This document shows, in pieces, positions 2,860 to 58,923 of a DNA stretch of 64,000 nucleotides (position 1 is its first letter; each line of letters begins with the position of its first letter). The notes under the pieces were generated by a model. The model saw only the letters and a program-made list of their open reading frames with translations. It did not search any database and was not told where the DNA came from. Location: NCBI RefSeq assembly GCF_001194135.2, contig NC_068981.1, forward strand, positions 160,804,792 to 160,868,791. The letters run 5' to 3'. Source of the stretch: Octopus bimaculoides (taxonomy: Eukaryota). Both the position numbers and the translations under genes were made by a program.

Positions 2860-3745
2860 GCAAAATATTGCTTCCACACCTGAAACTTCTCCTTCAGATC
2901 TTGTAGTAATTCAGCTATTAGAGCAAGGTCATCAGCATACAGGAGCTCCCATGGGCATCCTGTCTTGAATTCCTCTGTTATTGCCTGGAGGACCATGATG
3001 AATAAGAGGGGCCTGAGGACTGATCCTTGGTGGACCCCTATTCCTACCTAGAATTCTTCACAATACTTGTTGCCAACCCCCACCTTACAGCTTCTCTGTA
3101 CATAGCTTATACAGCCTTAACTAACCATTCATCTATCCCTAGTTTCCACATTGACCACCAGATAAGGATCAGTGGACCTTGTCAAAGGCTTTCTCCATGT
3201 CGGTGAAAGCCAAGTACAGAGGTTTATCTTTGGCTAGGAATTTCTCCTGCAGCTGTCTTACCAGAAATATAGCATCAGTGGTGCTTCTTCCTGGCACAAA
3301 CCCATACTGCATCTTGTCTAAACTAACTCTCTTCCTGATTTGTTGGGCTATGACCCTCTCTGTGACTTTCATCACCTGATCCAACAATTTGATACCTTGC
3401 ATGACACTATTACCCAAAGTGGTCTTTTCTGTAGGCTTTTTCTTTCCATGGATAAACCTAATCTGTTTTCCCTTTTTACATTGACATTTCTGTGATACAT
3501 GATCCCTATTGATCGTCTCCCCCCCCCTTTTTTTTTCACGATCCCTTTTGACTGGAATTCGACCCATTTTTTTTTCTTCTTCTTCCCAAAAAGAAAAACT
3601 CCACTTTGTATTTTGTCCCCTCTGTGTTCAGCCCTGTGTGGCCAATAAAGAAACATATCTAATGCGTCACCTTTTCCTTCATAGCAGTTGACTATGGTGC
3701 TGCTACACCAGTCATTGGGTATGACTCCATCATGTATCACCTGGT
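2860..3745 (-). mobile_element. RTE-clade LINE reverse transcriptase fragment, decayed and interrupted
   Basis: Minus strand reads WCSSTIVNCYEGKGDALD, GIKLLDQVMKVTERV, QYGFVPGRSTTDAIF, FTDMEKAFDKV, GVHQGSVL and LLYADDL (YADD at 2928-2939), with stops and frameshifts. Confidence 0.92.
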
Positions 3746-10305: not shown

Positions 10306-11039
10306 GCCGTTTTAGATATTTTTCTGATGTGAGGAAGAGGAAAGATGTGATGACTTAAGAATATTATGGCAATTGTAAAGAAGACTAACATAAACAAAAG
10401 TGAAGAAATGTTGATATCAACAACAATATAGATATATATATATATATATATATCTATATATATAATATAAATTATCACAAATTCTCTCCATATAAATTTA
10501 GTACTAATGTGAAGAAATTCTTGTTTAAAAAACATCTAAGTTGAAGGATAAATCTGAAAATATATCACAAATATCTATTCTAGTAAGAATTCTGTTTTTG
10601 TAACTAAATAGCATTTCTGTATGTGAGAGAATAAATACATCACTTGTATGTATTAGACATTATATTTTAAATTGAAGTGAAATAGTGATCTTAAGAAGCT
10701 TTGAATTAAAAAAAAAAAAAAATTNNNNNNNNNNAAAAAAAAAAAAAAATTTATTTCTTTCCAAGCAAGACTAAATACATTTGCCTTTACTCCTTTGTGA
10801 AATGTAAATCAGGTCAACAAAGCTGTATTATTAACAGGTCAATTTGTGAATTTATCTTTCCAGTATTGCAAGAAGGATTGTGAGTCATCCACAAAACACT
10901 CAAGTTTCGTGAGATTAGAACGAATCTGTTTTTTGGTCTTGATAAAATATTGGTAACACCTTGTTGAAAGAAAATTCTTAATGAGCTGAGTCTATTATTA
11001 CCCAGTTTTGATTTCTGTTTGTACAGACAGATCTTTTTA

Positions 11040-18478: not shown

Positions 18479-19032
18479 NNNNNNNNNNNNNNNNNNNNNN
18501 NNNNNNNNNNNNNNNNNNNNNNNNNNNNNNNNNNNNNNNNNNNNNNNNNNNNNNNNNNNNNNNNNNNNNNNNNNNNNNNNNNNNNNNNNNNNNNNNNNNN
18601 NNNNNNNNNNNNNNNNNNNNNNNNNNNNNNNNNNNNNNNNNNNNNNNNNNNNNNNNNNNNNNNNNNNNNNNNNNNNNNNNNNNNNNNNNNNNNNNNNNNN
18701 NNNNNNNNNNNNNNNNNNNNNNNNNNNNNNNNNNNNNNNNNNNNNNNNNNNNNNNNNNNNNNNNNNNNNNNNNNNNNNNNNNNNNNNNNNNNNNNNNNNN
18801 NNNNNNNNNNNNNNNNNNNNNNNNNNNNNNNNNNNNNNNNNNNNNNNNNNNNNNNNNNNNNNNNNNNNNNNNNNNNNNNNNNNNNNNNNNNNNNNNNNNN
18901 NNNNNNNNNNNNNNNNNNNNNNNNNNNNNNNNNNNNNNNNNNNNNNNNNNNNNNNNNNNNNNNNNNNNNNNNNNNNNNNNNNNNNNNNNNNNNNNNNNNN
19001 NNNNNNNNNNNNNNNNNNNNNNNNNNNNNNNN
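18479..19032. other. Assembly gap (554 N)
   Basis: Run of N. Other gaps: 10725-10734, 20134-20199, 27707-28025, 40812-40936 and 41208-41217. Confidence 1.
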
Positions 19033-19328: not shown

Positions 19329-20199
19329 GAAATATTCTAGGTAGGTAATTTGTTCCTTCTTATAAATTCCAAACTGAAAATTTTGATGGAATTTCTCTTT
19401 AGTGTATATTGTGAACATCTGCATTCTCAAATAGTTCTTCAGATTGCTGGCACTTCTTAGTTTTGATGAATTTTTCATCATGATGTACAGTCTAATGCTA
19501 CAATATTAATATTATTTCTTGAGCTTGAGCTTTTAAATTTGTTCATGCGTTTGTATTTATTTATATCAAACAGTATGTTTAAGTTAGACATTACTTGGTG
19601 TGTGTGCTTTAGTTTCTTTTGGTCATCACAGCCAAGACCATGATGGAGCACCCCTTTATTTTTTGTCTTATTATACTAGCAGTCATTTTTCATTTTGTAC
19701 AATTTGCAGTAAGAAGGAAGTTGAATTGTTTTAATTGAAATGAGGTGTAGTTCAATCTACTGGTGACTGCAGCCGAAACACCCTCAAATCACACTCTTCT
19801 GTTTTCATAACTTATTGCTTTAGTTACACTGCTGAGTCTATTTAGAGTAATCTCTCTCTCTCTCTCTCTCTCAAGCATTCTTGTTAAATATTATTGGGTA
19901 TTCTTATGAAACCTGTGGAAACTCCACAGGTTTTCTATTGAACACACAGAACTTTAGTTGTTTGTTAGTGTGGTGGTTATAATAATGGCAAACAGCAGGC
20001 AAGAGAAATAGACAGACAGAGTAATAGGAAATCATGACAATTGTTAGATGAGGTGGTAACAGTGAAAGATAGGAGAAACAAAATGAAATGTTGTTAAATC
20101 ACTATAGACATATAATCATATATGTACATGCACNNNNNNNNNNNNNNNNNNNNNNNNNNNNNNNNNNNNNNNNNNNNNNNNNNNNNNNNNNNNNNNNNN

Positions 20200-27680: not shown

Positions 27681-28994
27681 GCACGCACGCACGCACACAC
27701 GCACGCNNNNNNNNNNNNNNNNNNNNNNNNNNNNNNNNNNNNNNNNNNNNNNNNNNNNNNNNNNNNNNNNNNNNNNNNNNNNNNNNNNNNNNNNNNNNNN
27801 NNNNNNNNNNNNNNNNNNNNNNNNNNNNNNNNNNNNNNNNNNNNNNNNNNNNNNNNNNNNNNNNNNNNNNNNNNNNNNNNNNNNNNNNNNNNNNNNNNNN
27901 NNNNNNNNNNNNNNNNNNNNNNNNNNNNNNNNNNNNNNNNNNNNNNNNNNNNNNNNNNNNNNNNNNNNNNNNNNNNNNNNNNNNNNNNNNNNNNNNNNNN
28001 NNNNNNNNNNNNNNNNNNNNNNNNNGTACACACACGTACACACACACACACACGTACATACACACACGTACATACACATGTTTATATAACTAGTTTCATA
28101 ATCAGCCATTTGTTTAATTCTGTGTCTTACTTGAAAATTTTACTGTTATTTCTTTCTACTGTCAATTATTTAAGAAATTTTAGTTTCCTAGTATGCAATA
28201 CATGTAAAAGCTTACTTTGTGTATTGCTTCAGTATCACTGAAGAGGAGAATTTATGACTAATGAAAGAAATGCTACTGAGGCCATCATTTGACCTGATAA
28301 TGTAAAGGATATTGTCTGAAGTGCTGAGGCTTATCCTGAAGTGCAAATTCATGGAATAGTACTATGAACATTGGTCAGTGAGCAGGGGTGGGGAGTAGTG
28401 AGTGAGGGTTGCTTCCACATAGTCAGACTTGTTAGAAATTGCAGCCAAATCAACCTCAAATCATACCCTATTGTCTTAAAAAAAAGAAAAAGACACATTG
28501 AACAGTGTGTGTATGTGGTCCTAGATATACAAAAAGTTGATAGTTATGTCTGAGTAGAACTATAAAACTAATGCTGCTGTTGCTATCACCACCACCACTA
28601 CTACTGTATTTCAAGATAGGTGTACTGAGTACATACTAGCAGCTGTGTGGGGCTGGTTGGCAATCTGTATTTCTGCATTATTTTTGATGTATAGACACAA
28701 GCAGGTCCTGTTAAGTGAATGATAATCAGATGTGTCATAATTTAGTGATAAGCATTTAATCGTTCTTCTTCAACACTGTTTTATCTTTTAGAAAAGTTCA
28801 GAGAAGTATTTTACTCTTCTATCATTCTGAGTTCAAATTCTGCTGAGGTTGATTTTTGCCTTTTGTCCTTTCAGGGTTGATAAAATAGGTACCAGTTGAG
28901 CACTGGCATCAATATAATCAACTAGCTTGCTCTGCTCTCGAAATTTCAGACCTTGTACCTATAGTAGAAAGACTTGTTATTATGGGAGCTTTTT

Positions 28995-31400: not shown

Positions 31401-32818
31401 AATTATGATTTATTTTATAAAAAAACAATAAATATTTCTGAAGTAGATGTTTAGTCCATATCACTCCATAAGGAGCATAGGGCTGGTTTCTCAGTTTCTT
31501 TGGCCTATATATTCCTTTGTGGACAGGACACTGGTCTGTCGTAGGATTACTCATTTTTAGCACCTGAGTGGACTGGAGCATCATGAAATGAAGTCTTTTG
31601 CTCAAGAACACAATGCATTGCTTGGTCTGGGAATTGAAACCACATGCCTTTGATCCTATGTCCAACACCCTAACCACTAAGTCGTGTGTCTCCACAAGTT
31701 GATACAAGGCACAAATTTGAAGCAAGAGAATATTTCCTCCAATCTACTTCACTAATTGACTGCTGCTTATTTTATCAACCTCAGAAGGTCGTATCTGGTA
31801 GGATCCAAATTCAGAAAGTAAAGTGACAAAAATAATTGAAATGAAATAGCTACAATCAGGTAATTGAGGCTGGGTTGTGAACTTAGCTCACCAAAATCTT
31901 TCCTCCTTCCATACCTTTCTTAACCTTACCTTATTGTCAGTTCATGTACCCAACTGATTGTTGCTGCATTACTTAATACTTGTAGCTAATTTAAGAACAA
32001 ACTGAGTCTAGTTGTTAGTTGTCAATTAAAGAAAAAAAATAAAAAAATAAAACAGAGCTAATGATTACCTGCTTGCATTTCAAATATTCATCAGAGACCT
32101 GTCCACTCCTACCATTTATTGTTGCTAGTGGCTTCGATTCAAGTGCTTCAGATAGCCAACTTGATGTCCAGCTGGTCAGTAACACACATGTTTCTTGATG
32201 GCCTGCAACCATGTACACAGTGTTATTGTCCGTCTGTCATGTAGACTCCACAGATGGTTCAGAATGAGGAAAGCAAAGAAGAAATTTGCTCAGTTATGGT
32301 GATCATTTCTCAAGCAGTTCTATTTTTTTTTGCCCTTGTTTTTGATTTTTGCAAATTGTATCATTCTTTATTTGTATATTTATTTTCTTTCATTCTTAAA
32401 ATATCTTTTTAGATATACTTCATAATAGTTTTTTTAAAACTCACATTAAACTCTCTCTTTTCCTCTTTCTGTCTTGTTTGTACCTCCTTCTTTCTTTTTT
32501 CTATTGCTTCCCTCCTTTTCTTTTTCTGTTTCACTCTCTCTCTCTTAATTTCCACTCTTTCCTTTTATTCTCAAACATTGTCTCTCTCTTTCTCTCATTC
32601 TCTTGTTTTTGCTATCCTTATCCCATTTTCTCTTTGCTTATCTTCTTATTCTAGTTTTTTGTGTTCCCCCTCCTTCTTTCACTTATGTTCTCCCTCCTCC
32701 TTTCACTTTTATATCTCCTTCCCTCTTTTAGCTCTCCTCTCTCTCCAACATTATCACTTTTCCTCTCTTCATTTCCTTTATAATTTGTTCTCTTTCTCTC
32801 TCTCCCTCCCCAGCTTGT

Positions 32819-37598: not shown

Positions 37599-37701
37599 GT
37601 TGGAGTAATTAGAAAATACCTAGAAAAAGAAATTCATTTAAAGGTCCATGATCTTATGGATCCGAATGCTCTACTGGATGGAGGGGACGTTCTCTTCACT
37701 G
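37599..37701 (+). CDS. DDAH: DDAH-like gene, internal exon (equivalent to human DDAH1 exon 2)
   Basis: Acceptor tttttttatag and donor g|gtatgt. Translates VGVIRKYLEKEIHLKVHDLMDPNALLDGGDVLFT(G), matching the DDAH motif NATLDGGDVLFTG, with a phase-1 intron inside the final Gly as I recall for human DDAH1. Confidence 0.93.
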
Positions 37702-40811: not shown

Positions 40812-40938
40812 NNNNNNNNNNNNNNNNNNNNNNNNNNNNNNNNNNNNNNNNNNNNNNNNNNNNNNNNNNNNNNNNNNNNNNNNNNNNNNNNNNNNNNNNN
40901 NNNNNNNNNNNNNNNNNNNNNNNNNNNNNNNNNNNNTC

Positions 40939-41040: not shown

Positions 41041-41233
41041 CAGGTTTGATTTTGTTATTACACAAATATCACATTAGATTTTTACAATTCAACAAGGGAC
41101 ATCCCAAAAAGTATGGGCTTTCTTTCGCTTGAAATCACACACTTCGTTAATTTTCATAAAATATTTTTATTTATTTACCTTTTGAGCACTATGTTCAGCT
41201 CTATGTANNNNNNNNNNATGCACACATGTGTTT

Positions 41234-42765: not shown

Positions 42766-43139
42766 TTTATCATCACTGAATTATATTCAGTATGAATTAT
42801 TTATTATGTCTTTATCTTTGTATTAAATATATCTTTTTATAATTGTTTATTCAGAATTAGTAGGCAATTTCAAAATGTGCTTTTTATCTCATAAAGATTT
42901 AAAGGAAAAAATTAATGTTGGAATGAAAACAAAAAAACATTAAAAAGCAGAATACAGTGGAATTTTTAAGGAGTTGTGAATGAGAAAATTGTTCACTGAT
43001 GGGTTAGAAATAATAGTTGAATAAAGTTCACACTCCAGTTCCTTTTGTATTTACAATTCAGTTATGTTGAACATTTTTATATTCTCTATTATTATTTGGG
43101 AATATCATTTGCCTTACAAACTAGTAACAATTAATCAAG

Positions 43140-52417: not shown

Positions 52418-52678
52418 NNNNNNNNNNNNNNNNNNNNNNNNNNNNNNNNNNNNNNNNNNNNNNNNNNNNNNNNNNNNNNNNNNNNNNNNNNNNNNNNNNN
52501 NNNNNNNNNNNNNNNNNNNNNNNNNNNNNNNNNNNNNNNNNNNNNNNNNNNNNNNNNNNNNNNNNNNNNNNNNNNNNNNNNNNNNNNNNNNNNNNNNNNN
52601 NNNNNNNNNNNNNNNNNNNNNNNNNNNNNNNNNNNNNNNNNNNNNNNNNNNNNNNNNNNNNNNNNNNNNNNNNNNNNN
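52418..52678. other. Assembly gap (261 N), predicted to hide DDAH-like coding sequence
   Basis: Run of N immediately before an in-frame exon end and consensus donor. Confidence 0.95.
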
Positions 52679-52702
52679 TCTGAATCAAAACTTCTGTTTC
52701 AG
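52679..52702 (+). CDS. DDAH: DDAH-like gene, visible 3' end of an exon otherwise hidden in the gap 52418-52678
   Basis: 24 nt after the gap read SESKLLFQ and end at a consensus donor CAG|GTAAGT in phase 0, compatible with the next exon. Position corresponds to human ...SSESAQKALK|. Confidence 0.6.
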
Positions 52703-55215: not shown

Positions 55216-55347
55216 CAAATTAAAGAGCGCACCTCTAACACATACTTCAAATTAGACTTTGACAGTGATGTACCAGCCAGTGTGTTGTTTGCAAATGGTA
55301 CACTGATCCATCGCAGCCGAGAAGAAATGGGAGTGACTAACTGCAGT
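55216..55347 (+). CDS. DDAH: DDAH-like gene, penultimate coding exon
   Basis: ttgtag acceptor and agt|gtaaat donor, 132 nt. QIKERTSNTYFKLDFDSDVPASVLFANGTLIHRSREEMGVTNCS aligns with human [27 protein letters not shown]...LLHRTPEEYPESAK. Confidence 0.88.
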
Positions 55348-58087: not shown

Positions 58088-58285
58088 ATTTTAGATGAGA
58101 AGATTGGGTATGACCGGGACGAGGTAGAACTGCGAGAATTTGACAAGCTAAACCGTACCATAAGTAGCCTGTGCCTGCTTATCAACAGAATCAAGACTAC
58201 CCGACAGATCATGTCGGATATCAATGACGAAGATATCAACAGCTATTCTACGTTGACCAGAAAAAGCAAGGATTATTACAAATAG
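58088..58285 (+). CDS. DDAH: DDAH-like gene, last coding exon with TAG stop
   Basis: ttttatttcag acceptor. ILDEKIGYDRDEVELREFDKLNRTISSLCLLINRIKTTRQIMSDINDEDINSYSTLTRKSKDYYK* aligns with the DDAH C-terminus (SELEKVDGLLTCCSVLIN / SELEKAGAGLSSLCLVL). Confidence 0.9.
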   Translation: MLDEKIGYDRDEVELREFDKLNRTISSLCLLINRIKTTRQIMSDINDEDINSYSTLTRKSKDYYK

Positions 58286-58923
58286 TCTGTCATTAAGCTA
58301 TCTCTTTCTTATTGTTTTGTCGATTTTTCTTTTTAAACTCTGAGTAAAAATTTTTTGGTGGAGTGGAAACTATATATTTTTTTTTTAATTTTTCTTTTTT
58401 AACTCCCCATTTGCTGCTCTAGCTTAATTATCATCCATAAATTTAAGCTAATTTGGAGACTTCAATGACAAATGCAAACACTTAAATACTAATAATCATA
58501 GTTACAAGACAATAAGTTCCAAGAGATAACAGTTTCGTTGTAAGTTGTTAGCATTAATACATCAGTATGATTTTAAAGAAACCATGAGGAAATGAAATGC
58601 TAACGAAAATATACCCATTAATATAGGATTTTGGTGAAACTTCATTCCAGCTTCTTTATTTCGGTTCATTTCATATTTTATGTACTCTTTAAGTTGAGTA
58701 TGTGATGAAATTAAATTTTTTTTTTTTTTTTTGCCCATTCTTCTTTCCATACCGATTCCATACTGCTGTTGTAGTTTTTATAACAAAGCCAGCATTTATT
58801 TTAACATTCAACGATGTTTTAAAATTTTATTAATCGAGTTTTTCAATTTATGCCAACTGGTTTTTATAATATTTTATTTATCTTCTAATATGATTTTGTT
58901 AAAACTGCTTTGATGTAGATGTA

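What the first reader, a model, noticed from the sequence alone, without database searches (positions are those of the whole stretch)
58142..58186. DDAH-like protein lacks the catalytic cysteine and carries a DDAH2-type SSLCL motif: probable pseudoenzyme
Seen: DKLNRTISSLCLLIN. Aligned without gaps to human DDAH1 EKVDGLLTCCSVLIN, the nucleophile position (C274) is Ser (AGC, 58166-58168), D269 is Asn, G270 is Arg, and a Cys lies two residues later. The triad Asp (D127, LDGGD) is retained at 37677-37679; the triad His is in the gap. Known: human DDAH2 has LSSLCLVL here and is reported not to hydrolyse ADMA. Inference: a non-catalytic or neofunctionalised DDAH in an invertebrate. The SSLC state may predate the vertebrate DDAH1/DDAH2 split or be convergent. 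The intact frame and splice sites imply a retained function such as methylarginine sensing or scaffolding.
Basis: partly seen in the sequence, partly recalled or inferred. Interest (0 to 1): 0.7.

Follow-up and report, generated by a model that had tools for sequence, protein, structure and literature searches.

The report
Octopus DDAH-like protein without catalytic cysteine
An expressed, conserved octopus relative of the enzyme that clears the nitric-oxide-synthase inhibitor ADMA has serine where the catalytic cysteine should be, a loss shared by all molluscs sampled and separate from the loss in human DDAH2.

Summary
Window 58142-58186 encodes DKLNRTISSLCLLIN in the last exon of an Octopus bimaculoides DDAH-family gene (RefSeq XP_014791248.1, "DDAH1-like"). 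phmmer, MAFFT, hhalign and the secondary-structure register of two AlphaFold2 models all put Ser (AGC, 58166-58168) on DDAH1 Cys274 and the Cys (58172-58174) on DDAH1 Ser276. Asp269 is Asn, Gly270 is Arg and Arg145 is Asn. Asp127, Glu78, Asp79 and Arg98 are kept. His173 is also kept: its exon lies in the assembly gap 52418-52678 and was recovered from a 100%-identical spliced RNA contig.

The same codons occur in O. sinensis, so this is not a sequencing error or a pseudogene. Ser274 is shared by every cephalopod, bivalve and gastropod copy of this clade (NJ bootstrap 94), together with a conserved C-terminal tail.

The link to DDAH2 is convergence. Vertebrate DDAH1 and DDAH2 form their own clade (98-100%), and shark and snake DDAH2 read SSCS, not SSLC.

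Most likely this is a protein that does not hydrolyse ADMA but keeps a binding pocket. Loss of activity is inferred, not measured. No canonical paralogue was found for cephalopods, although some gastropods have one.

The parts
58166..58168 (+). AGC, Ser at the column of the DDAH1 nucleophile Cys274
   Evidence: The same codon is present in O. sinensis.
58172..58174 (+). TGC, Cys at the column of DDAH1 Ser276. It is conserved in cephalopods but is V/L/A/H/F in most other molluscs.
58151..58156 (+). AAC CGT, Asn-Arg at the columns of DDAH1 Asp269-Gly270
58088..58285 (+). Last coding exon (ILDEKIGY...DYYK plus TAG stop). The 3'UTR continues to at least 58732.
   Evidence: The acceptor is TTTCAG|ATT. 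RNA contig L002 nt 450-1094 is 100% identical to 58088-58732.
58187..58282 (+). 32-residue C-terminal tail RIKTTRQIMSDINDEDINSYSTLTRKSKDYYK. It is absent from canonical DDAH and conserved in molluscs, an annelid and a nemertean.
   Evidence: dN/dS is 0.22 for the tail against 0.65 for the core, on few sites. AF2 pLDDT is 56-69 in this region.
55216..55347 (+). Coding exon 4 (QIKERTSN...TNCS)
   Evidence: AG and GT flanks are present. It matches L002 nt 318-449 at 100%.
52679..52702 (+). Visible 3' end of coding exon 3 (SESKLLFQ) followed by a GT donor
52418..52678 (.). Assembly gap (261 N) hiding about 170 nt of exon 3, including the Asn at the Arg145 column and the His173 codon
   Evidence: O. 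sinensis is collinear on both sides of the gap. The missing sequence is present in RNA contig L002.
37599..37701 (+). Coding exon 2 (VGVIRKYLEK...LDGGDVLFT plus the first base of the Gly codon). It contains Asp127 at 37677-37679.
32254..32298 (+). Putative alternative first coding exon (MVQNEESKEEICSVM), as in O. sinensis isoforms X2 and X3. The main first exon (residues 1-92) lies outside the window.

Best explanation
This is the 3' part of the Octopus bimaculoides member of a mollusc-wide (probably lophotrochozoan-wide) branch of the DDAH family. It keeps the DDAH fold. It keeps the pocket residues Glu78, Asp79, Arg98, Asp127 and His173. It has Ser in place of the nucleophilic Cys274, and in cephalopods it has also lost Asp269, Gly270 and Arg145 and changed Asp73 to Glu.

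It most likely cannot hydrolyse ADMA or L-NMMA. It is retained under selection as a non-hydrolytic binding or adaptor protein: the pocket would hold a guanidino-type ligand without turnover, as engineered Cys-to-Ser DDAH variants do, and the added acidic and aromatic C-terminal tail would provide a partner-binding element.

Shown here: the residue states, the fold, expression, conservation, and an origin separate from DDAH2. Inferred: loss of activity, ligand binding, and the role of the tail.
For: - Residue states: four alignment methods agree.
- Register: DSSP on the canonical DDAH1 model gives helix 272-275, coil 276, strand 277-279. The octopod model gives helix 261-263, coil 264, strand 265-267, with Lys267 = Lys255. 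Hence Ser262 = Cys274.
- Fold: the AF2 model has pLDDT 92.9 and matches DDAH1 crystal structures at target-normalised TM 0.85-0.94 and rmsd 1.7-2.3 A.
- Canonical baseline: C274, R145, H173, D73, D79 and R98 are invariant in 61 canonical DDAHs.
- Co-variation: across 349 homologues, loss of C274 goes with loss of D269 and R145.
- Published data: human DDAH2, with Ser274, does not hydrolyse ADMA, and a Cys-to-Ser DDAH fails to catabolise ADMA (PMC10256801).
- Ligand-bound Cys-to-Ser variants: these exist as crystal structures (3p8p, 1h70).
- Expression and splicing: RNA contig L002 is 100% identical to the window exons.
- Conservation: identical codons in O. sinensis and dN/dS 0.55. Cephalopod orthologues are 60-87% identical, with an almost invariant tail.
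- Age: the mollusc clade with Ser274 has bootstrap 82-94, and E78, D79, R98, D127 and H173 are retained in nearly all its members.
Against: - No activity or binding was measured.
- A dead site should drift, yet Ser274 is very strictly kept, and cephalopods, insects and mammalian DDAH2 all keep a Cys at column 276. This hints at a chemical role for these residues.
- dN/dS of the core (0.65, only about 30 substitutions) shows weak constraint between the two octopus species.
- No atomic coordinates could be inspected, so the distance of Cys264 from the pocket is unknown.
- The model is of the Argonauta orthologue (89% identical), not of the O. bimaculoides protein itself.
Confidence: 0.6

Rival explanations
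1. It is still an enzyme. Either Ser274 (with His173 and Asp127) or the relocated Cys at column 276 acts as the nucleophile on a substrate other than free ADMA, for example a peptidyl or otherwise modified guanidino compound. The altered Arg145, Asp269 and Asp73 positions would have re-tuned specificity.
For: - His173, Asp127, Glu78, Asp79 and Arg98 are retained.
- Ser is kept at column 274 in 121 of 153 Cys-less homologues. Cys is at column 276 in 93 of those 153, against 4 of 196 canonical ones.
- The 276 Cys arose in several separate lineages: mammal, bird and catfish DDAH2, insects, cephalopods, Haliotis, Sinanodonta and Sarcoptes.
Against: - Engineered Cys-to-Ser DDAH is inactive, and DDAH2 shows no ADMA hydrolysis. 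Published simulations placed DDAH2 Cys276 away from catalytic distance (PMC10256801).
- Most bivalves and gastropods of the same clade have no Cys at all in the motif (SSLV, SSLL, GSLA, ASLH), so the Cys cannot be essential to the function of the clade.
- The AF2 register puts the Cys on Ser276, not on Cys274.
Confidence: 0.25
2. It is the invertebrate orthologue of vertebrate DDAH2, and SSLC is an ancient state that predates the DDAH1/DDAH2 split.
For: The S-S-L-C-L string is literally identical to mammalian DDAH2. The Arg145 and Asp269 columns are lost in both.
Against: - Vertebrate DDAH1 and DDAH2 form an exclusive clade with bootstrap 98, and 100 when the active-site columns are removed.
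- DDAH2 of shark, ray and snake reads SSCS, bird SSCC and catfish SSFC.
- The octopus protein groups with mollusc proteins (82-94%).
- Column 145 is Trp in most DDAH2 but Asn in cephalopods.
Confidence: 0.03
3. It is an artefact: a sequencing or assembly error at 58166, or a decaying pseudogene.
For: The assembly is gapped (1345 N in the window), and the RefSeq model of this gene is wrong in the middle.
Against: - An independent RNA contig is 100% identical across the exons.
- The O. sinensis genome has the identical codons.
- The reading frame is open and the splice sites are canonical.
- The state is conserved in all molluscs sampled.
Confidence: 0.02

Closest known systems
Vertebrate DDAH2 (HGNC name 'DDAH family member 2, ADMA-independent')
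   Same: It has the DDAH fold with Ser at the nucleophile column and has lost the Asp269 and Arg145 columns while keeping His173 and Asp127. Mammalian DDAH2 even shares S-S-L-C-L. It is reported not to hydrolyse ADMA (PMC10256801).
   Different: The origin is separate. DDAH2 is a vertebrate-specific sister of DDAH1, and its early-branching members read SSCS. DDAH2 has Trp at column 145 (Asn in octopus), lacks Asp73 and Glu78 in human (from my memory of the sequence), and has no C-terminal tail.
Canonical DDAH1 / bacterial DDAH (EC 3.5.3.18; PDB 2jai, 2c6z, 1h70)
   Same: The fold matches (target-normalised TM 0.85-0.94). Sequence identity is about 30%. Glu78, Asp79, Arg98, Asp127 and His173 are shared.
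   Different: Cys274 is Ser, Ser276 is Cys, Asp269 is Asn, Gly270 is Arg, Arg145 is Asn and Asp73 is Glu. There is an extra 32-residue tail. In effect it resembles a natural version of the engineered C274S (3p8p) and C249S (1h70) variants.
Insect 'DDAH1' proteins (Tribolium, Nasonia, Zootermopsis and others)
   Same: They also have Ser (or Ala) at column 274, Cys at column 276, a lost Arg145 (Trp, Phe or Tyr) and Asp73 changed to Glu.
   Different: They group with arthropod sequences, next to canonical crustacean and chelicerate DDAHs, although the deep nodes are weak. They have no lophotrochozoan tail.
Trypanosoma brucei RESC5 (PDB 8dpk)
   Same: It is a DDAH-fold protein and is a structural match to the model (query-normalised TM 0.72). 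From my own knowledge, not tested here, it is a non-catalytic subunit of the RNA-editing substrate-binding complex.
   Different: Sequence identity is only 15-16%. It is a different lineage in a different cellular context.

Membership tests
DDAH family / pentein (guanidino-group modifying enzyme) fold | Five-module beta/alpha propeller fold, with significant sequence similarity to DDAH | tested here: met
   phmmer against PDB DDAH1 gives E 1.5e-23. hhalign against the canonical profile gives probability 100% and E 1e-63. The AF2 model (pLDDT 92.9) matches DDAH1 structures at target-normalised TM 0.85-0.94. NCBIfam dimethylargininase models score far below their cut-offs (92 bits against 340).
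Catalytically competent dimethylargininase (EC 3.5.3.18) | Nucleophilic Cys at the DDAH1 Cys274 column | tested here: not met
   The residue is Ser (AGC, 58166-58168) in four kinds of alignment and in the AF2 register. Cys274 is invariant in 61 canonical sequences.
Catalytically competent dimethylargininase (EC 3.5.3.18) | His173 and Asp127 of the catalytic triad | tested here: met
   Asp is at 37677-37679. His is in exon 3, recovered from RNA contig L002 (KLHLKN) and present in O. sinensis.
Catalytically competent dimethylargininase (EC 3.5.3.18) | Substrate-binding residues Asp73, Glu78, Asp79, Arg98, Arg145 and Asp269 | tested here: not met
   Glu78, Asp79 and Arg98 are kept. These three lie in exon 1, outside the window, and were read from the RefSeq model P0129 and from orthologues. 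Arg145 is Asn, Asp269 is Asn and Asp73 is Glu.
Catalytically competent dimethylargininase (EC 3.5.3.18) | Conversion of ADMA or L-NMMA to citrulline | not testable with these tools
   This needs a recombinant enzyme assay.
Vertebrate DDAH2 orthology group | Phylogenetic placement with DDAH2 | tested here: not met
   NJ trees with 100 bootstraps place vertebrate DDAH1 and DDAH2 in an exclusive clade (98 and 100). The octopus protein falls in the mollusc clade (82 and 94).
Vertebrate DDAH2 orthology group | Ser at column 274 with no Cys there | tested here: met
   This state is convergent; see the row above.
Lophotrochozoan Ser-type DDAH-like clade (defined here) | Ser (rarely another residue) at column 274, plus a C-terminal tail of the form [KR]xx[IVM]xS[DNT][IL]xxxD...[YF]xx[hydrophobic] | tested here: met
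   The tail and Ser274 are shared with bivalves, gastropods, Owenia and Tubulanus. Clade support is 82-94 for molluscs and weak beyond them.

The most novel reading that the evidence does not exclude
The paired change Cys274-to-Ser with Ser276-to-Cys is a recurrent, selected relocation of the thiol. On this reading it defines a functional class of DDAH-fold proteins across animals: mammalian DDAH2, insects, cephalopods and some gastropods, bivalves and mites. These would share an ADMA-independent chemistry, such as redox, NO or metal sensing, or hydrolysis of a different substrate. Cephalopods, and probably insects and bivalves, would then have no canonical ADMA hydrolase at all and would have to control methylarginines by another route, despite prominent nitric-oxide signalling.
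Probability: 0.2. Interest if true: 0.8.

Novelty: new variant of a known kind. Interest (0 to 1): 0.5.

Why it matters
Since 2023, DDAH2 has been accepted as not being an ADMA hydrolase, and its real biochemical role is open. This octopus gene shows that the same loss of the nucleophile happened separately and very early in molluscs. The survey made here shows it also in insects, some mites, a shrimp paralogue, a priapulid and a tardigrade.

Two points follow. Cysteine-less DDAH-fold proteins are repeatedly kept by selection, so they do something. And invertebrate models could be used to find out what, which would bear on the DDAH2 question.

There are practical consequences as well. 'DDAH1-like' annotations in molluscs and insects should not be read as ADMA-clearing capacity. 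The RefSeq model of this particular gene is wrong in its middle exon.

Tried and rejected
- **tblastn with DDAH1 from memory:** Close homologues were needed to go further.
- **N-terminal exon:** searches of the window with O. sinensis and other cephalopod proteins found nothing. In O. sinensis the first intron is about 68 kb, so exon 1 lies outside the window.
- **Exon 3 as an ORF between 37.7 and 55.2 kb:** absent. It is in the gap.
- **Pfam:** it gives only partial ADI and DDAH_eukar hits that do not reach the C-terminal motif, so it could not be used to place the nucleophile.
- **PF26170:** this family is listed in the precomputed annotations but was not returned by the local Pfam scan.
- **Literature:** searches for mollusc or Drosophila DDAH biochemistry, and for 'DDAH' with 'pseudoenzyme', found nothing relevant.
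- **Deep phylogeny:** nodes linking lophotrochozoan, ecdysozoan and gastropod-canonical groups have bootstrap below 40. I therefore do not claim how many separate Cys losses occurred within protostomes, nor when the gastropod canonical paralogue arose.
- **Structure tools:** they return no coordinates, so the distance from the Cys thiol to the pocket could not be measured. Only the DSSP register was compared.
- **DDAH2 orthology and artefact or pseudogene readings:** both were considered and rejected; see the rival explanations.

Full report
**1. What is in the sequence**

Window 58142-58186 (+) translates to DKLNRTISSLCLLIN.
- AGC (Ser) at 58166-58168
- TGC (Cys) at 58172-58174
- AAC CGT (Asn-Arg) at 58151-58156
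- GAT (the first Asp of LDGGD) at 37677-37679

The window has 1345 N in seven runs.

**2. Gene model**

The closest named proteins are 'DDAH1' isoforms of Octopus sinensis, at 86-87% identity. The RefSeq protein XP_014791248.1 of Octopus bimaculoides (P0129) has the same C-terminus as the window, so the window is O. bimaculoides.

Coding exons on the + strand:

| Exon | Coordinates | Content |
|---|---|---|
| Alternative first exon | 32254-32298 | MVQNEESKEEICSVM |
| Exon 2 | 37599-37701 | VGVIRKYLEK...LDGGDVLFT |
| Exon 3 | only its last 24 nt, 52679-52702 | SESKLLFQ |
| Exon 4 | 55216-55347 | QIKERTSN...TNCS |
| Exon 5 | 58088-58285 | ILDEKIGY...DYYK and stop |

All have AG/GT boundaries.

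The rest of exon 3 is hidden in the N run 52418-52678. The O. sinensis locus L001, where the gene spans 92 kb, is collinear with the window up to 52417 and again from 52680.

An RNA-derived contig (L002, Logan SRR32601320) confirms the model. It is 100% identical to exon 2, the exon 3 tail, exon 4, exon 5 and the 3'UTR to 58732. It joins them exactly at these boundaries and supplies the missing exon: KEIFVGVGQNTNEAGAIAVARLYEDYSVISLSLSSKLHLKNLISMAGRGVVVIGNS. The triad His is therefore present.

The main first exon (residues 1-92) is not in the window. In O. sinensis it lies 68 kb upstream of exon 2.

The RefSeq model fills the hole with a spurious exon, ELVGNFKMCFLSHKDLKEKIN, at window 42855-42916.

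**3. Which residue sits at the nucleophile position**

Four lines of evidence agree:
- phmmer against PDB chains aligns ...FDKLNRTISSLCLLINR with ...LEKVDGLLTCCSVLINK without gaps. The best-scoring chain is the human C274S variant 3p8p.
- MAFFT alignments of 124, about 100 and 349 homologues give the same columns.
- hhalign of a cephalopod profile against a profile of 61 canonical DDAHs gives the same columns, with probability 100%.
- AF2 models have the same secondary-structure register around the motif, as shown below.

| Model | pLDDT | Helix before motif | Coil | Helical turn | Coil | Strand |
|---|---|---|---|---|---|---|
| Bat DDAH1 (canonical) | 95.0 | 263-266 | 267-271 | 272-275 | 276 | 277-279 |
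| Argonauta orthologue (89% identical to the window protein) | 92.9 | 251-254 | 255-260 | 261-263 | 264 | 265-267 |

With Lys267 = Lys255, this gives Ser262 = Cys274 and Cys264 = Ser276. The octopod model matches DDAH1 crystal structures at target-normalised TM 0.85-0.94 and rmsd 1.7-2.3 A.

No coordinates were available, so the register is indirect evidence. Nothing supports a shifted alignment that would put the Cys at the attack position.

**4. Other active-site columns**

In 61 canonical sequences, D73, D79, R98, R145, H173 and C274 are invariant, and E78, D127, G270, T273 and S276 are nearly so.

The cephalopod proteins read as follows:
- Kept: E78, D79, R98, D127, H173
- Changed: D73 to E, R145 to N, D269 to N (S in Argonauta), G270 to R, C274 to S, S276 to C

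Half of the pocket is therefore kept: the residues that in DDAH1 hold the guanidino group, plus the His/Asp pair. The nucleophile and two of the residues that hold the amino-acid end are gone.

**5. Is it real and constrained**

- O. sinensis has the identical codons AGT AGC CTG TGC.
- Octopus, Argonauta and three further cephalopod sequences keep SS[LM]C and an almost invariant tail.
- Between O. bimaculoides and O. sinensis, over 151 codons, dN/dS is 0.55: core 0.65 and tail 0.22. This rests on only about 34 substitutions.

Selection is visible but modest in the core over this short distance. The deep conservation across molluscs is the stronger argument.

**6. Relatives**

A profile search returned about 300-residue 'DDAH1-like' proteins from many molluscs: Dreissena, Mya, Mercenaria, Sinanodonta, Pinctada, Haliotis, Patella, Pomacea, Babylonia, Batillaria, Biomphalaria, Arion, Candidula and others. 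All have Ser at column 274 and a related C-terminal tail.

The Cys at column 276 is present in cephalopods, Haliotis, Sinanodonta and one unnamed sequence. Elsewhere it is V, L, A, H or F. An annelid (Owenia) and a nemertean (Tubulanus) have Ser and a similar tail.

In NJ trees (Kimura distances, 100 bootstraps, with and without active-site columns), support was:
- Mollusc Ser-type clade: 82 and 94
- Cephalopods: 100
- Vertebrate DDAH1 + DDAH2 as an exclusive clade: 98 and 100
- DDAH2 alone: 100

DDAH2 of whale shark, skate and cobra reads LSSCS. A finch reads LSSCC, catfish LSSFC and mammals LSSLC (PMC10256801). The SSLC string of octopus and mammals is therefore convergent.

Ser at column 274 also occurs in other lineages:
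- all insects sampled (SSCC, TSCC or SSSC, with Trp, Phe or Tyr at column 145)
- sarcoptiform and mesostigmatid mites, next to canonical trombidiform mites
- one Penaeus protein nested inside canonical crustaceans (Crustacea bootstrap 100)
- a priapulid
- a tardigrade

Deep protostome nodes are weak (bootstrap below 40). The number of separate losses is therefore not fixed. At least the vertebrate, mollusc and Penaeus events are separate.

**7. A second paralogue**

A canonical protein (D-E-D-R-D-R-H-D with T-C-C-S) exists in three Haliotis species, Babylonia, Lottia and Gigantopelta. Haliotis and Babylonia carry both types.

The search with the Haliotis canonical protein listed no cephalopod or bivalve protein among the 120 best hits (cut-off E 3e-48). 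The annotated proteomes of O. bimaculoides, O. sinensis, O. vulgaris and Argonauta hians contribute to the database. An orthologue at about 45% identity should have ranked near the top.

This is good but not conclusive evidence that cephalopods lack a canonical DDAH. No cephalopod genome could be searched directly.

**8. A pattern across the family**

Among 349 homologues that cover the motif:

| Set | n | Ser at 276 | Cys at 276 |
|---|---|---|---|
| Cys at 274 | 196 | 185 | 4 |
| No Cys at 274 (Ser in 121) | 153 | 8 | 93 |

In the second set, D269 and R145 are mostly replaced, while E78, D79 and R98 are mostly kept. H173 is kept in 106.

These counts are not phylogenetically independent, because insects dominate. 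Even so, the 276 Cys appears in several separate lineages. This is unexplained and is the main reason to keep an 'altered enzyme' rival alive.

**9. Interpretation**

The most likely reading (0.6) is a DDAH-fold protein that cannot hydrolyse ADMA, retained for a non-hydrolytic role.

The evidence for loss of activity is by analogy. Engineered Cys-to-Ser DDAHs are inactive but still bind ligands (PMC10256801; PDB 3p8p and 1h70). DDAH2, which carries the same replacement, shows no ADMA hydrolysis in a multicentre study.

Two things suggest a retained function: the kept half of the pocket, and the strongly conserved tail. The tail is an acidic run followed by an aromatic-x-x-hydrophobic motif, with low pLDDT. 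Together they suggest ligand binding plus partner binding.

The rival, an enzyme with a different nucleophile or substrate, is given 0.25. DDAH2 orthology (0.03) and artefact or pseudogene (0.02) are contradicted by the data.

**10. Novelty**

Cysteine-less DDAH-fold proteins are known. DDAH2 is one. From my own knowledge, trypanosome RESC5 is another, and it appears among the structural matches.

The following do not appear in the searchable literature (the library is incomplete):
- an ancient, phylum-wide mollusc lineage of separate origin
- its own C-terminal tail
- the apparent absence of a canonical copy in cephalopods

I rate this a new variant of a known kind, with interest 0.5.

Noticed in passing
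window 42855-42916 (+): The RefSeq protein XP_014791248.1 for this gene contains a spurious 21-residue exon (ELVGNFKMCFLSHKDLKEKIN, AG/GT flanked). It stands in for the true exon 3, which is hidden in the assembly gap. The public model therefore lacks the His173 region.
   Followed up: yes
window 52418-52678, with further N runs at 10725-10734, 18479-19032, 20134-20199, 27707-28025, 40812-40936 and 41208-41217: These are assembly gaps. The one at 52418-52678 removes about 170 nt of coding sequence. Several of the others are flanked by CA/TC microsatellite-like sequence.
   Followed up: partly
related proteins P0155, P0285, P0286, P0288, P0289 and P0290 (Haliotis x3, Babylonia, Lottia, Gigantopelta): These gastropods carry a second, fully canonical DDAH paralogue (T-C-C-S with all binding residues) beside the Ser-type copy. 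In the NJ tree this clade (bootstrap 92) falls outside the other metazoan DDAHs, with weak deep support. Its origin is unclear.
   Followed up: partly
Canonical proteins read Cys...Ser, and 61% of Cys-less proteins read Ser...Cys. The 276 Cys occurs in several separate lineages. All insects sampled lack Cys274 and Arg145.
   Followed up: partly
window 58187-58282 (+) and orthologues: The lophotrochozoan C-terminal tail has an acidic run followed by [YF]-x-x-[LIVW] (DEDINSYSTL, DEDMDRYATI, QDCIQYSDV). It resembles an LC3-interacting or YxxPhi-type short linear motif. AF2 predicts a short helix with low confidence there.
   Followed up: no
related proteins P0118 (Babylonia X2), P0096 (Littorina X2) and P0042 (Physella X2): Some gastropod Ser-type genes have alternative last exons that give a different C-terminus (for example ...AIRRMVLPFLKLKYYKHLVSSAP). 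These also lack any Cys at the motif.
   Followed up: no
window 3169-3567 (-): This ORF has LINE-type reverse-transcriptase motifs (…GFVPGRSTTDAIFLVRQLQEKF…YLAFTDMEKAFDKV). It is a retroelement fragment upstream of the gene.
   Followed up: no
L001 (O. sinensis CM016859.1, 170238287-170336462): The orthologous gene spans 92 kb for a 300-codon CDS, with a first intron of 68 kb. Intron sequence around exon 3 is about 92-93% identical between the two octopus species.
   Followed up: partly
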